This document shows, piece by piece, positions 40,309 to 43,317 of a stretch of DNA of 64,000 bases (position 1 is the first letter of the stretch; each line of letters opens with the position of its first letter). Where the stretch lies: positions 23,765 to 87,764 of the forward strand of contig JAHLWZ010000838.1 of the NCBI GenBank assembly GCA_020536535.1, in the 5' to 3' direction. Under the pieces are notes generated by a model. That model searched no databases. It was given only the letters and a program-made list of their open reading frames with translations, and was not told where the DNA came from. The DNA is from Pelomyxa schiedti (lineage: Eukaryota > Protista > Evosea). The position numbers and the translations under genes were made by a program.

Positions 40309-42268
40309 TTAATCGGCGGAGCCAGTCCCAACGGTGACAACGTGGGAGTCGCTGTCAAAAGCAATTGTGGGAGGGTCCTTGTTGTTGACCCAGAACTTGT
40401 GGCCCCACGCCAATTTGATGACCGAGCACAGCACGATGTGCCACGCCACCCACACCGAGCCCAGGATACTGAACCAGATCTTGTCGTACAACTTCAGGTT
40501 GTCCGGGTCGATCAGGGAACACGTGGCATTCTCCACCACGATGAGGCCCAGAGTCGTGAACGCCACGATGATGTAGAACTGTATTGGTTTTGGGGAGGGT
40601 GAATTGTGGGATATACACGCATTGGGCACGTACATCGATAACAGTCAAATAGGATATTCGGGGTAAATACGCTGACGTGGCACCTTTGAATGCCACGGCC
40701 GTGAGCAAAAGTGTCAATGATATTGACAGCCGTGTCTGTTGTAATTGTTGACATTGTGGGTAGGATACATCAAGGATATGGGATTGGGATTGGTACTTGG
40801 ACGTCAGTTGGATCAATACACGCAGAAAGAAACCCAAGGGATATAATGAAGAACAAGGGTGACATTAGATTCCCAGCGTAAAATCCAGATCGCCTCTCCG
40901 CTTCTGTTTGAATACAAAACCCTTCTGCGTTGGTTGTGGGGTCAGGCCTGATTATTATAGTCAGCCAATTAATAGACGTTGAGAGATTGTCACTTGAGCT
41001 TTTTGATTCTGGGATTTGACGGAAACCCCGTGACCCACTCCACTTCGTCACAGTCACAATCGGCGGCACCAAATCCCATGTTATATTCAAATGTCACCTT
41101 CTGGGACTGGTTTGGAGTTAGTACTTTCCAATGCTGTGGAGTTCACACCTTTTGCTTTGTTGTGTCATGGCGTACAAGGACCCTAAACACATGCCTATCA
41201 AAAGGAAAGTGGCGCATCAGAAAGTAGTCCTCAAATGTTCCAGTGAGGATGATGGTATAAAATATCTTATCCCCTTCTCCCACGGTGATGAATTCGCTTT
41301 TTATTTCTGTACAGGAATGTAAGTGCAGCAAGCCAATCATAGTGCACTCTTTTACCTGTTAGAGTTGCATTTTCAAAGAATAAGACGGGTTTCCAGACTT
41401 TTTCGACATCCAGTTTGGCACCAGTGAGGCCACTCTCCGCGTGAGATTTTAAGGCATTAGCAATACCAAGGGACCCTATCATTGTGGACTGAATTGCCTC
41501 ATGGAATGATCCTTGAGTGCCTTCTTTTATATGGGATTTCTCCTTGCAAGAGCCGAACAAAATCCTGTCAACATCCCCCATGTTCCAGCTCATGACTATT
41601 ACCAAATGCAGTCCAAAGCAATGGTTGATCAAATCCACATCCAGTTTGGAAACCTTCACTTTGTTTATGCACACAGTGACATTTGCCTGTGTCTGTGGAA
41701 GCGGTGCTCCGTTGAGCTGATCTTTGATGATGTGTCTCTCGAGAGGGTCTGCAACTCCTACTTGTTCCAGAATCGCGTCATTTGTACCCCTGGAAATAAG
41801 GAAGAAGTTTCAGTCCCCAGGTAACAAAGGGAATATTAAACAGAATGAATATAACAGGGAGTCATACACATCGATGAGCTTCTTGAGGTCATATTTCGCG
41901 TTTACCAGACCAGTGGCGTGCCTCTCAAGGCCAAAATCCCAACCATCATCAACGTGTTTGAGCCATTCTCTCAGTTGTGCACCTGGCCAAACGATTATTC
42001 ACCACAATGAAGCTATTTGGTTTTCTTTTACTTTGCAGTTCTTTTTCCTTTTCATCGGCGGTATCGTCCTTGTCCACTAGTCAAATTCCTCGTCAGTAGA
42101 TACACAAAACCAAATGTGGTCCAACTTACCAGGAGTTTTTACATGGTGGCGATGACGAGACGACAGCTTCTTGTGGTGATGGTGATGATTGTGCCTGCGC
42201 CTCGTGGTGCTCGTGTCTCTTTCGCTTACTGCATCGTAGGTAGTGCTTGCGGTGTCTTGGGAAGACAT
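40309..42268 (-). CDS. Cys-less pentameric ligand-gated ion channel with N-terminal SAM-like domain
   Basis: beta1-2 VTVCINKVKVSKLDVDLINHCFGLHLVIVMSW; VWKPVLFFEN; GTFEDYFLMRHFPFD; ERRSGFYAGNLMSPLFFIISLGFL (M1); TRLSISLTLLLTAVAF (M2); LPRISYLTVID; M3 and M4 joined by a short loop. Confidence 0.88.
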
Positions 42269-42302
42269 GACTTGTTTTTGACTCCTTATTCTTATTTTTT
42301 TG

Positions 42303-42747
42303 GTTTTCGTTCTTGCGTTGCTTGAGATGACTTGGTGATTGTGTTTTCTTTGTTATTATTTAATATGTAACTTGGGTTTCGGTTTCCGGTTAAGAAGGCC
42401 CTCTGATCAAACGCAGGGAAAGCATGTGGCGAATATTCTTCACGTGGAGAGAACATCCCTTATCTGTACCTTTCTTCAGAGGTGGAATTTTCGGGAGAGG
42501 ATTGAGGAGATTTTTGAATCGGAACACACTTCGACAATCTGTCGTGGAAGGTTTCACTAAAATTCCACCTCTGAAGAAAGGTACAGATAAGGGATGTTCT
42601 CTCCACGTGAAGAATATTCGCCACATGCTTTCCCTGCGTTTGATCAGAGGGCCTTCTTAACCGGAAACCGAAACCCAAGTTACATATTAAATAATAACAA
42701 AGAAAACACAATCACCAAGTCATCTCAAGCAACGCAAGAACGAAAAC
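42303..42747. repeat. Perfect inverted repeat: 189-bp arms, 67-bp spacer
   Basis: 42303-42491 is the exact reverse complement of 42559-42747 by inspection. No target-site duplication outside the arms. Confidence 0.95.
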
Positions 42748-42754
42748 TGACAGA

Positions 42755-43317
42755 ATGCAAGTCAGAATGAACATCCACCTTCAGTTGAGGGTCTGCAATG
42801 GGTTTGGGGATGCAGTGAGGAATGGCATGAAGAGGTCACTCATCGAGTCCCTTGTCAAGCAGTCAAATGGTGCCATTAGGTCGGAGCTGGGCCCTCCTGG
42901 CTTCAGAGAGAGCTTCCCGAACAACGGATGGACTGGCTTCGACTACGTCATCGACGCTCCAATCATTGTCAACGTCGAGTATGTTGTTTTAGTCCTCAAA
43001 AAATGTTTCTGTTTTCTGACATAACTGTCCCTCCAGTGCGCTTCTGAAAGCAAATGTTGGGAGATTTGCAGGGCTTGGAAAGAAGCTCCTTGGCATCACT
43101 GGCAACGGTCCCATTGCGTCAAAAATACGAGACCAGCTTGATGCGGCAATCAGGCAGAATCTGGCTGAGGCTGACTGGACTGGCCTGAGTGCCTCCCTTG
43201 AAGGCTGTAATGTTACCCTTAGGTGAAGTTGTAGAATTTGCACACTCATAGAGTGCTTTGTAAGAAAGAAACTTTATTCCACATAAACTTGTTGTTGTTG
43301 GATTTTTCAGGCGTTAA
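42755..43317 (+). CDS. Hypothetical protein (~138 aa, 3 exons)
   Basis: MQVRMNIHLQLRVCNGFG...IVNV-DALLKANVGRF...GCNVTLR-R*, joined by two GT-AG introns. Confidence 0.6.

What the first reader, a model, noticed from the sequence alone, without database searches (positions are those of the whole stretch)
40309..42268. Signal-peptide-less, SAM-domain-fused pentameric ligand-gated ion channel: possible inverted-topology channel
Seen: a complete Cys-less pLGIC (WxP..F.N, FPFD loop without cysteines, four TM helices, short M3-M4 loop, M2 preceded by DPTDVQTR). The N-terminus is polar and His/Arg-rich (RRRHNHHHHHKK...RHRHH) with no hydrophobic signal peptide. It is followed by LREWLKHVDDGWDFGLERHATGLVNAKYDLKKLIDVGTNDAILEQVGVADPLERHIIKDQL, which fits the SAM pattern (WL...gl..y...l.....d...l....t...L.q.Gv....r..i...l). 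Established: animal and bacterial pLGICs export the N-terminal ligand-binding domain with a signal peptide, while SAM domains are cytosolic oligomerisation or RNA-binding modules. Inference: the ligand-binding domain may face the cytosol, giving a channel gated by intracellular ligand, metal or pH and clustered by SAM polymerisation. That would be a new signalling system in an amoeba.
Basis: partly seen in the sequence, partly recalled or inferred. Interest (0 to 1): 0.82.

Follow-up and report, generated by a model that had tools for sequence, protein, structure and literature searches.

The report
Signal-less SAM-like pentameric channel, probably inverted
An anaerobic amoeba (Pelomyxa schiedti) expresses a real but very divergent relative of neurotransmitter-receptor channels that has no secretion signal and carries a SAM-like module in front, and several sequence features it shares with relatives suggest that its "ligand-binding" half sits inside the cell rather than outside, which would be new for this channel superfamily.

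Summary
Window 42268-40309 (minus strand) is a nine-exon gene. Its translation is identical to NCBI's "hypothetical protein Pelo_12267" of Pelomyxa schiedti (508 aa, P0005).

- **Expression:** it is transcribed, and three introns are confirmed by RNA contigs.
- **Fold:** it folds as a pentameric ligand-gated ion channel (Foldseek E about 1e-20 to sTeLIC, GABA-A, GlyR and ELIC).
- **Gating residues:** FPFD Pro-loop, pre-M1 Arg, 0'Arg/6'Thr/9'Leu in M2 and the M2-M3 Pro are all kept.
- **Signal peptide:** none, and no hydrophobic stretch before M1.
- **SAM-like segment:** sequence support is weak but consistent (Pfam SAM_1 is the only hit, E 0.036; SHIP2-SAM E 0.017). Structure evidence is inconclusive.

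The inverted-topology idea cannot be proven here, but it gained indirect support that reaches beyond this gene:

- About 29 relatives (Cnidaria, echinoderms, annelids, diatom, oomycetes, metagenomes) also lack signal peptides.
- Those relatives have short M3-M4 loops and long K/R-rich tails after M4.
- Two of them start with WW or EF-hand domains.
- The three signal-peptide-bearing relatives have 1-4-residue tails.

I found no paper on this. The scan's first readers noted similar signal-less, SAM-like pLGIC genes on other pieces of this genome; those notes are unchecked.

The parts
40309..42268 (-). Whole gene: nine exons, 508-aa product identical to P0005 (Pelo_12267, Pelomyxa schiedti)
   Evidence: The spliced translation equals P0005. 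RNA contigs cover the 3' exons and exon 3/4.
42130..42268 (-). Exon 1: start codon and polar N-terminus, with a His/Arg-rich tract (aa 23-42, about 42202-42143). No signal peptide.
   Evidence: The paralog P0001 has an equivalent His/Arg-rich start. There is no RNA coverage of this exon.
42032..42076 (-). 45-nt mini-exon encoding an acidic linker (VDKDDTADEKEKELQ)
   Evidence: It is needed to reproduce P0005. It turns one 147-nt intron into two of 53 and 49 nt, in line with the others. The paralog has an acidic linker at the same place. It is not RNA-verified.
41705..41980 (-). SAM-like domain (aa 63-128), split by the 78-nt intron 41790-41867
   Evidence: Pfam SAM_1 is the only hit, at E 0.036 and below its cut-off. 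SHIP2 SAM is the best PDB sequence hit, E 0.017-0.04. About 60 of 100 language-model neighbours are SAM families. AF2 gives five helices at low confidence. The intron is confirmed by an RNA contig.
40887..41683 (-). Beta-sandwich ligand-binding domain (aa 136-355). It contains WKP..F.N (aa 231-241), a roughly 45-residue helical insertion (aa 172-218) and the pre-M1 Arg353.
   Evidence: AF2 secondary structure. Foldseek match to pLGIC structures. Invariant columns in the family alignment.
41197..41208 (-). Pro-loop motif FPFD (aa 278-281), with no flanking cysteines
   Evidence: P279 and D281 are invariant in 32 aligned relatives.
40408..40880 (-). Transmembrane domain M1-M4 (aa 358-476). M2 carries R387 (0'), T393 (6') and L396 (9'). 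The M2-M3 loop carries P410, Y414 and T416. The M3-M4 loop is 18 aa.
   Evidence: pLDDT is above 90. Conservation is, loop lengths and charges. Introns 40736-40796 and 40579-40633 are confirmed by RNA.
40309..40407 (-). Post-M4 hydrophilic tail (about 32-35 aa, with three Lys near the membrane) and the stop codon
42294..42756 (.). Intergenic palindrome (203-nt arms, 97% complementary, 57-nt spacer). It fills the space between this gene's ATG and the divergent neighbour's ATG, and is presumably a shared promoter region.
   Evidence: DNA contigs break inside it. It has no copy elsewhere in the window and is absent from the paralog locus.

Best explanation
**What it is.** An expressed Pelomyxa schiedti gene for a highly divergent, Cys-less (Pro-loop) pentameric ligand-gated ion channel subunit. 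Its order is: His/Arg-rich tract, acidic linker, SAM-like helical domain, beta-sandwich ligand-binding domain, M1-M4, short basic tail.

**Most likely topology.** The 355 residues before M1 hold no signal peptide or hydrophobic segment. M1 most likely inserts as a type-II signal anchor, with the N-terminus in the cytosol. The whole channel would then sit upside-down relative to classical pLGICs. The SAM-like domain, the ligand-binding domain, the M2-M3 loop and the C-tail would face the cytosol. The acidic M1-M2 loop and the short M3-M4 loop would face outside or a lumen.

**How it would work.** Five subunits would form a pore gated at the 9' Leu by a cytosolic ligand, ion or proton that binds the beta-sandwich domain. 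Gating would use the conserved coupling elements (Pro-loop, pre-M1 Arg, M2-M3 Pro). The SAM-like and His-rich front end would serve for clustering, scaffolding or metal/pH sensing.

**Shown versus inferred.**
- Shown: the gene, its splicing (in part), the pLGIC fold, conserved gating residues, absence of a signal peptide, and the charge and tail pattern across relatives.
- Inferred: SAM identity, topology, pentamer formation, ligand and membrane location.
For: **Gene and expression.**
- The nine-exon model equals P0005.
- RNA contigs confirm three introns and expression.

**pLGIC identity.**
- Full-length phmmer with the paralog reaches Pfam-positive pLGICs at 1e-19.
- The AF2 model has a TMD pLDDT above 90.
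- Foldseek against the PDB gives E 7.8e-20 and TM 0.71-0.77 to sTeLIC, GABA-A, GlyR, ELIC and DeCLIC.
- Invariant residues are P279, D281, R353, L396, P410, Y414 and T416.

**No signal peptide.**
- Hydropathy scans find none.
- In-frame stops lie upstream of the ATG.
- The upstream hydrophobic mini-ORF is explained as the antisense of the neighbour's coding start.
- The paralog has the same architecture.

**Topology.**
- K/R count is 7 on the LBD side against 2 on the other side. The range is 6-12 against 0-3 in nearly all signal-less relatives. In signal-peptide-bearing relatives it is 3 against 4, 3 against 8 and 5 against 2.
- Post-M4 tails are 21-210 residues and K/R-rich in all signal-less relatives, against 1-4 residues in the three with signal peptides.
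- A WW domain at residues 3-30 of P0031 and an EF-hand pair at residues 5-73 of P0036 directly precede the LBD.
- Capitella P0040 and diatom P0033 have long Lys/Ser-rich tails.
- The signal-peptide-bearing trio forms a separate clade, support 99/96.

**SAM.**
Against: - There is no experimental topology and no topology predictor was available.
- No RNA covers exon 1, so the 5' end rests on annotation, the paralog and upstream stops.
- From my own knowledge: some proteins (e.g. neuregulin-1, some GPCRs) translocate sizeable N-terminal domains without a signal peptide, so absence of one is not proof.
- The pre-M1 Arg and the M2-M3 K/R are conserved in all pLGICs. Part of the charge bias is therefore family-wide. 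For this gene the non-family-wide excess is small (3 K in the tail against 2 in M3-M4).
- The contrast between signal-peptide-bearing and signal-less relatives rests on one small clade of three sequences, so it is effectively one evolutionary event.
- SAM hits are below the curated thresholds.
- The isolated domain model is low-confidence (pLDDT 59). It matches SAM structures only at Z 2.2-2.4, below unrelated helical proteins.
- Pfam LBD and TMD scores are below gathering thresholds.
Confidence: 0.55

Rival explanations
1. Canonical topology. The ligand-binding domain, together with the SAM-like domain, is exported to the cell surface or an organelle lumen without a cleavable signal peptide, through N-tail translocation driven by M1 or an unconventional route. 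The channel would then sense an external or luminal ligand like other pLGICs.
For: - All characterised pLGICs have an exoplasmic LBD (established knowledge).
- The fold and the gating residues are canonical.
- Precedents exist for signal-less N-out proteins (my own knowledge).
- The charge bias of this particular protein is modest once family-wide basic residues are set aside.
Against: - About 355 hydrophilic residues, including folded domains, would have to cross the membrane post-insertion.
- The N-flank of M1 (RR) is more positive than its C-flank (DPTD), which favours N-in.
- Relatives carry cytosolic-type modules (WW, EF-hand) at the very N-terminus.
- Relatives carry long K/R-rich tails after M4.
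- SAM domains are known only from intracellular proteins (established knowledge).
Confidence: 0.25
2. Gene-model artefact. The true transcript has a further 5' exon that encodes a signal peptide or an extra TM helix, and this exon was missed by annotation in this gene and its paralog.
For: - No RNA coverage of exon 1 or of the intergenic region in the only RNA run available.
- A hydrophobic 20-codon ORF (ATG at 42774, minus strand) could in principle splice in frame to a site just upstream of the ATG.
Against: - That ORF is the antisense of the neighbour gene's conserved start codon region. It diverges completely after 7 codons between the two paralog loci.
- It overlaps an exon of the plus-strand neighbour seen in RNA.
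- In-frame TAA TAA stops lie upstream of the ATG.
- The His/Arg-rich N-terminus is conserved in the paralog.
- About 29 relatives from independent annotations and transcript assemblies also start without a signal peptide, several of them with conserved N-terminal coiled-coil-like segments.
Confidence: 0.07
3. The N-terminal helical segment is not a SAM domain but an unrelated small helical bundle or an extension of the LBD. The rest of the reading is independent of this point.
For: - Pfam SAM_1 scores 14.9 bits against a cut-off of 23, and nothing is found for the paralog segment.
- The isolated AF2 model has pLDDT 59.
- Foldseek finds nothing at E below 1.
- VIA Z for SAM structures is 2.2-2.4, lower than for unrelated helical proteins, which reach up to 4.8.
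Against: - SAM is the only family hit in Pfam, and the alignment covers profile positions 7-60 of 64.
- The top three PDB sequence hits are the SHIP2 SAM domain, at 33-39% identity over 42-70 aligned residues.
- Most language-model neighbours are SAM families.
- The helix count and the length fit SAM.
Confidence: 0.3
4. Decaying or non-channel relic: a pLGIC-derived protein that no longer conducts ions.
For: - It sits on a very long branch (2.26 substitutions per site).
- Pfam scores are below threshold.
- There is an unusual helical insertion in the LBD.
- It has no acidic residue at -1'.
Against: - The reading frame is intact across nine exons.
- It is expressed and spliced.
- The two paralogs are 71% identical, with near-identical TMDs.
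- All invariant gating and pore residues are retained.
Confidence: 0.05

Closest known systems
Eukaryotic Cys-less Pro-loop receptors (clade described by Jaiteh, Taly and Henin 2016, PMC4795631)
   Same: - Cys-less Pro-loop and a four-TM pLGIC fold.
- The nearest sequence relatives are cnidarian, echinoderm, annelid, oomycete and diatom proteins of this kind.
- The biology of the clade is undocumented.
   Different: - That paper lists no amoebozoan member and says nothing on signal peptides, N-terminal domains or topology.
- The Pelomyxa proteins sit on a long branch of their own.
- They add a His-rich tract and a SAM-like domain found nowhere else.
Prokaryotic pLGICs: sTeLIC, ELIC, GLIC
   Same: - Best structural matches: sTeLIC 9ex6_A at E 7.8e-20 and ELIC at TM 0.71-0.74.
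- No Cys-loop disulfide, and a short M3-M4 loop.
   Different: - The bacterial channels are exported with signal peptides and end within a few residues of M4. The three signal-peptide-bearing relatives in my set have tails of 1-4 residues.
- This protein has no signal peptide, a tail of about 32-35 residues and 135 extra N-terminal residues.
DeCLIC (bacterial pLGIC with an extra N-terminal domain)
   Same: A pLGIC with an added N-terminal module in front of the LBD. It is a structural match (9ftg_A, E 2e-18).
   Different: From my own knowledge, DeCLIC's extra domains are periplasmic beta-rich lobes behind a signal peptide. Here the module is helical, SAM-like and preceded by a polar His-rich tract.
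SHIP2 / Eph-receptor SAM domains
   Same: The best sequence matches of residues 63-128 (E 0.017-0.04), sharing the pattern WL..GLE.Y...L......L..L..GV.....R..I...L.
   Different: - Scores are below family thresholds.
- The Pelomyxa domain has a DDGWDF insertion after the first helix.
- Oligomerisation surfaces were not examined.
- I found no SAM-pLGIC fusion in the literature.
Channels gated from the cytosolic side (IP3R/RyR, CNG/HCN, TPC): functional analogy only
   Same: If the topology inference holds, the ligand-sensing domain faces the cytosol and controls an ion pore.
   Different: These families are unrelated in fold and stoichiometry. No homology is claimed.

Membership tests
pLGIC / Pro-loop receptor superfamily | N-terminal beta-sandwich domain followed by a four-helix transmembrane domain | tested here: met
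   The AF2 model shows the beta strands and four helices. Foldseek gives E about 1e-19 to 1e-20 and TM 0.71-0.77 to solved pLGICs.
pLGIC / Pro-loop receptor superfamily | Pro-loop with conserved Pro and Asp (F-P-F-D) | tested here: met
   FPFD lies at residues 278-281. P279 and D281 are invariant in 32 aligned relatives.
pLGIC / Pro-loop receptor superfamily | Pore and coupling residues: pre-M1 Arg, M2 0' basic, 6' Ser/Thr, 9' Leu, M2-M3 loop Pro | tested here: met
   R353, L396 and P410 are invariant. R387 and T393 are nearly invariant.
pLGIC / Pro-loop receptor superfamily | Pfam Neur_chan_LBD and Neur_chan_memb at gathering score | tested here: not met
   Scores are 13.8 bits against a cut-off of 26, and 16.9 against 28.1. 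Both partial hits are collinear. Full-length phmmer with the paralog reaches Pfam-positive pLGICs at 3.6e-19.
pLGIC / Pro-loop receptor superfamily | Signal peptide and exoplasmic ligand-binding domain | tested here: not met
   There is no hydrophobic N-terminal segment, and stops lie upstream of the ATG. The side the LBD faces is not testable with these tools.
pLGIC / Pro-loop receptor superfamily | Pentameric assembly and ligand-gated conductance | not testable with these tools
   Both structure-prediction jobs were monomer runs.
Cys-loop receptors (metazoan-type subfamily) | Disulfide-bonded 13-residue Cys-loop | tested here: not met
   No Cys flanks FPFD. The cysteines are at 140, 157, 181, 314, 316, 346, 378, 439 and 470.
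Eukaryotic Cys-less clade (Jaiteh et al. 2016) | Groups with Cys-less protist and invertebrate channels rather than with prokaryotic channels | tested here: inconclusive
   The nearest sequence hits are cnidarian and echinoderm Cys-less proteins. In the tree the signal-peptide-bearing trio is a separate clade (99/96). The backbone is unresolved and Pelomyxa sits on a 2.26-long branch.
SAM domain | Match to a SAM profile at the family threshold | tested here: not met
   SAM_1 scores E 0.036 and 14.9 bits against 23. It is the only family hit and covers profile positions 7-60 of 64. There is no hit for the paralog segment or for the longer segment.
SAM domain | Compact five-helix bundle of about 65-70 residues | tested here: inconclusive
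   Five helices are predicted in both models, but pLDDT is 40-66. Foldseek gives E above 1, with about 12 SAM entries in the top 50. VIA Z for SAM is 2.2-2.4.
SAM domain | Similarity to solved SAM domains | tested here: inconclusive
   SHIP2 SAM is the top hit at E 0.017-0.04.
SAM domain | Head-to-tail oligomerisation or partner binding | not testable with these tools
   This needs biochemistry.

The most novel reading that the evidence does not exclude
The whole signal-peptide-less branch of eukaryotic Cys-less pLGICs is inserted N-in/C-in. The branch comprises Pelomyxa, cnidarians, echinoderms, annelids, molluscs, diatoms and oomycetes. These would be the first pentameric ligand-gated channels whose ligand-binding domain faces the cytosol. 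They would be gated by an intracellular messenger and tuned by lineage-specific cytosolic modules: SAM-like plus His-rich in Pelomyxa, WW, EF-hand or coiled coil elsewhere, and long basic tails after M4 in place of the classical M3-M4 intracellular domain.
Probability: 0.5. Interest if true: 0.88.

Novelty: new variant of a known kind. Interest (0 to 1): 0.76.

Why it matters
pLGICs are among the best-studied receptor families, and every characterised member senses a ligand outside the cell or in the periplasm.

A branch that is built the same way but mounted upside-down would add a new class of intracellularly gated channels. It would also give a reason for the undocumented biology of the "Cys-less" eukaryotic clade. 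That clade has no disulfide, no signal peptide, no M3-M4 intracellular domain, and a long tail after M4 instead.

The idea is cheap to test. Topology mapping and inside-out patches on any member would do, including members from tractable animals such as Nematostella.

For Pelomyxa, it points to an expanded, lineage-specific channel family with SAM-like scaffolding modules in an anaerobic amoeba full of endosymbionts. What these channels sense is unknown.

Tried and rejected
1. **Pfam on single exons** gave nothing useful except a faint Neur_chan_memb hit for the M2 exon.
2. **My first seven-exon model** broke frame in "exon 5". Adding a 46-nt intron fixed it. The annotated protein then showed two further differences: a 45-nt mini-exon and an acceptor 6 nt upstream.
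3. **A hydrophobic mini-ORF as a hidden signal-peptide exon.** The ORF starts at the ATG at 42774 on the minus strand, and its start recurs upstream of the paralog. I rejected it because it is the antisense of the neighbour's conserved coding start.
4. **The exhaustive representative search with exon 4** found only the paralog's cluster plus three spurious repeat proteins.
5. **The word-indexed search of the N-terminal region** found only the two Pelomyxa proteins.
6. **The profile search with alignment A1** returned only six proteins. I therefore could not enlarge the control set or reach the other Pelomyxa paralogs noted by the scan.
7. **RNA.** The only RNA run is tiny and does not cover exon 1, the mini-exon, or the introns 41307-41355, 41107-41148 and 40948-40993.
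8. **Structure of the isolated N-terminal domain** was low-confidence and the structural searches were inconclusive.
9. **Literature searches** for inverted, signal-less or SAM/EF-hand-fused pLGICs found nothing.
10. **The conserved neighbour gene** has no Pfam family, and only weak leads to GHKL-like features and to flagellin.
Full report
**1. What is at the coordinates**

The region carries a minus-strand, intron-rich eukaryotic gene. My first hand-built model broke frame. Adding a 46-nt intron gave an open 491-codon model with four C-terminal hydrophobic helices and none before residue 340.

An exhaustive search with the largest exon found one true relative, P0001 (68% identical over the exon). 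A search seeded with P0001 returned P0005. The two are named "hypothetical protein Pelo_4295" and "Pelo_12267" of Pelomyxa schiedti.

P0005 is this gene's product. Nine exons translate to it exactly: 42268-42130, 42076-42032, 41982-41868, 41789-41356, 41306-41149, 41106-40994, 40947-40797, 40735-40634 and 40578-40309. It differs from my model by a 45-nt acidic mini-exon and an acceptor 6 nt further upstream. All introns are 42-78 nt and GT..AG.

**2. Expression**

Logan contigs of a single-cell RNA run hold the 3' exons at depth about 18. They skip 40579-40633, 40736-40796 and the 78-nt intron between exons 3 and 4, exactly as modelled. Three other runs hold the unspliced locus and are evidently DNA.

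Exon 1, the mini-exon and three introns have no RNA coverage. One RNA contig ends at 40945 in 24 letters that match neither the window nor the paralog locus. This is unexplained; it may be a chimeric contig.

**3. Is it a pLGIC?**

Pfam alone does not say so:
- Neur_chan_memb scores 16.9 bits (cut-off 28.1).
- Neur_chan_LBD scores 13.8 bits (cut-off 26).
- Both hits are collinear and in the right places.

Three other lines do say so:
- Full-length phmmer with the paralog reaches Pfam-positive pLGICs from corals, sea anemone, echinoderms and others at 1e-19 to 1e-10.
- An AF2 model built on a 32-sequence alignment has mean pLDDT 70, with the TMD above 90. It matches sTeLIC, GABA-A, glycine receptors, ELIC and DeCLIC at Foldseek E 1e-18 to 8e-20 and TM 0.71-0.77 (DeCLIC 0.43).
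- The alignment's invariant columns are the family's functional core: P279 and D281 of the FPFD Pro-loop, pre-M1 R353, L396 (9' of M2 if R387 is 0'), and P410, Y414 and T416 of the M2-M3 loop.

No cysteines flank the Pro-loop. The protein is therefore a genuine, very divergent Cys-less pLGIC subunit. The LBD carries a poorly modelled helical insertion of about 45 residues (aa 172-218).

**4. The N-terminus**

There is no signal peptide. The best 10-residue hydrophobicity near the N-terminus is -0.07, and TAA TAA stops lie in frame 90 nt upstream of the ATG.

The only upstream candidate was a hydrophobic 20-codon ORF starting at 42774. Its first seven codons, MFILTCI, recur upstream of the paralog. 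The alignment of the two upstream regions explains this. The conserved stretch is the antisense of the start of a divergently transcribed neighbour gene, MQVRMNI..., and the two ORFs diverge completely after it. RNA supports that neighbour on the plus strand (contig 42749-43256, GT..AG intron 42979-43036). A hidden signal-peptide exon is therefore unlikely, though not excluded without 5' RNA data.

The paralog has the same His/Arg-rich start and acidic linker.

**5. SAM or not**

| Test | Result |
|---|---|
| Pfam, residues 45-140 | no hit |
| Pfam, residues 63-128 | SAM_1 is the single hit: E 0.036, 14.9 bits against 23, profile positions 7-60 of 64 |
| Pfam, paralog segment | no hit |
| Profiles of the two Pelomyxa segments against PDB sequences | SHIP2 SAM domain is the top three hits, E 0.017-0.09 |
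| Language-model feature search | about 60 of the 100 nearest clusters are SAM families, but at a score of only 0.68 |
| AF2, both models | five helices, pLDDT 40-66 |
| Foldseek, isolated domain | nothing below E 1 |
| VIA re-alignment, isolated domain | SAM structures at Z 2.2-2.4, below unrelated helical proteins |

My reading is that the segment is probably SAM-like (about 70%), but this is not demonstrated.

**6. Topology**

This cannot be measured here, but sequence features bear on it. I aligned 38 relatives and counted Lys and Arg in the loops.

For this protein, the LBD side (pre-M1, M2-M3 loop, first 15 residues after M4) has 7 K/R. The opposite side (M1-M2 and M3-M4 loops) has 2. 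The M1-M2 loop is acidic (DPTDVQT) and the pre-M1 flank is RR. By the positive-inside rule this favours an N-in orientation of M1.

The wider pattern is more telling:

| Feature | About 29 relatives without a signal peptide | 3 relatives with a clear signal peptide (P0007, P0013, P0039) |
|---|---|---|
| M3-M4 loop | 14-36 residues, 0-3 K/R | 21-22 residues, 2-8 K/R |
| Tail after M4 | 21-210 hydrophilic residues, usually rich in K/R (5-35 K/R in most; 2-3 in the two Pelomyxa proteins) | 1-4 residues |

The signal-less relatives come from corals, Nematostella, sea stars, Capitella, Owenia, a diatom, oomycetes, MMETSP and metagenomic sequences. The signal-peptide-bearing trio forms its own clade (99/96).

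Two signal-less relatives begin directly with cytosolic-type modules: a WW domain at residues 3-30 (P0031) and an EF-hand pair at residues 5-73 (P0036). Capitella P0040 and the diatom P0033 end in Lys- and Ser-rich tails over 100 residues long. One AlphaFold-DB cluster representative has the pLGIC at residues 3-302 of a 686-residue protein named for an arrestin C-terminal-like domain; this is a lead only.

With four TM helices, the N-terminus, LBD and C-tail lie on one side of the membrane. All these features say that side is the cytosol.

Caveats:
- The pre-M1 Arg and the M2-M3 basic residue are family-wide.
- The contrast with signal-peptide-bearing relatives is effectively one evolutionary event.
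- From my own knowledge, exceptions to "no signal peptide means N-in" exist.

**7. Mechanism proposed**

M1 acts as a type-II signal anchor, and the pentamer sits with its beta-sandwich domains in the cytosol. A cytosolic ligand, ion or proton binds there and opens the 9'-Leu gate through the conserved Pro-loop, pre-M1 and M2-M3 coupling.

The SAM-like domain and the His/Arg-rich tract would add clustering, scaffolding or metal/pH sensitivity. Ion selectivity is open: -1' is Thr here, whereas most relatives have Asp. The membrane in which the channel sits is unknown.

**8. Comparison with what is known**

Jaiteh et al. 2016 (PMC4795631) described Cys-less pLGICs in protists and invertebrates and called their biology undocumented. 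The paper does not mention amoebozoans, signal peptides, N-terminal domains or topology. Later papers that mention Cys-less pLGICs do not either. Targeted searches for inverted, signal-less or domain-fused pLGICs found nothing.

The gene is thus a member of a known superfamily, with a new front end and a probably new orientation.

**9. Earlier notes of this scan**

First readers flagged several other pLGIC genes on other pieces of this genome with similar traits: no signal peptide, SAM-like domains, and one with a CaaX tail. All are unchecked. One of them has the same length (1953 letters) as the paralog gene I examined in L001, so it may be that gene. The palindrome upstream was also noted, and I confirmed it.

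**10. Verdict**

- SAM identity and topology remain inferences that ordinary experiments can settle.

Noticed in passing
window 42294-42496 and 42554-42756: A palindrome with 203-nt arms (97% complementary) and a 57-nt spacer fills nearly the whole 486-bp gap between the channel's ATG (42268, minus strand) and the divergent neighbour's ATG (42755, plus strand). Each gene therefore sees the same sequence upstream. The DNA assemblies of three runs break inside it. It has no other copy in the window and is absent from the paralog locus.
   Followed up: partly
window 42755-42978 + 43037-43223 (+); L001 3697-3237 (-): A 136-aa orphan protein (MQVRMNIHLQLRV...) is transcribed divergently from the channel, and its intron is confirmed by RNA. 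A 59-69% identical copy sits head-to-head with the paralog channel in L001, where no gene was called. The channel and this small gene were therefore duplicated as a pair. It has no Pfam family, and only weak leads (GHKL-like features, flagellin D0-like segment).
   Followed up: partly
window 40945 (RNA contig of run X1): The RNA contig covering exons 7-9 runs on beyond 40945 into 24 letters (reverse complement CCCTGGTGGAGGTCCGCCGCGATA). These match neither the expected exon 6, nor the window, nor the paralog locus. As a result the 46-nt intron 40948-40993 rests on the paralog's protein and the annotation only.
   Followed up: partly
P0005 residues 172-218 (window about 41575-41435, minus strand): A helical insertion of about 45 residues sits between beta2 and the WKP (loop A) region of the ligand-binding domain. 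It is modelled at low confidence and is shared with the paralog.
   Followed up: no
P0031, P0036 (ENA assemblies); AFDB A0A817CVD4: Other signal-less pLGICs carry a WW domain (residues 3-30) or an EF-hand pair (residues 5-73) at the extreme N-terminus. One AlphaFold-DB representative has the pLGIC at residues 3-302 of a 686-aa protein named for an arrestin C-terminal-like domain.
   Followed up: partly
P0006, P0008, P0015, P0018-P0020, P0023, P0022, P0027, P0035: Cnidarian, echinoderm and annelid members of the signal-less group share a conserved N-terminal segment of about 50-75 residues that looks like a coiled coil (e.g. ...EDRFSILLSRLDRIEASLAGLEDVKKLL...) in place of a signal peptide.
   Followed up: no
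P0002-P0004: The three other 'hits' of the exhaustive search are long repeat proteins (CPSF_A/beta-propeller, PKD repeats, TPR/NB-ARC). They match short stretches many times over, so they are spurious rather than relatives.
   Followed up: yes
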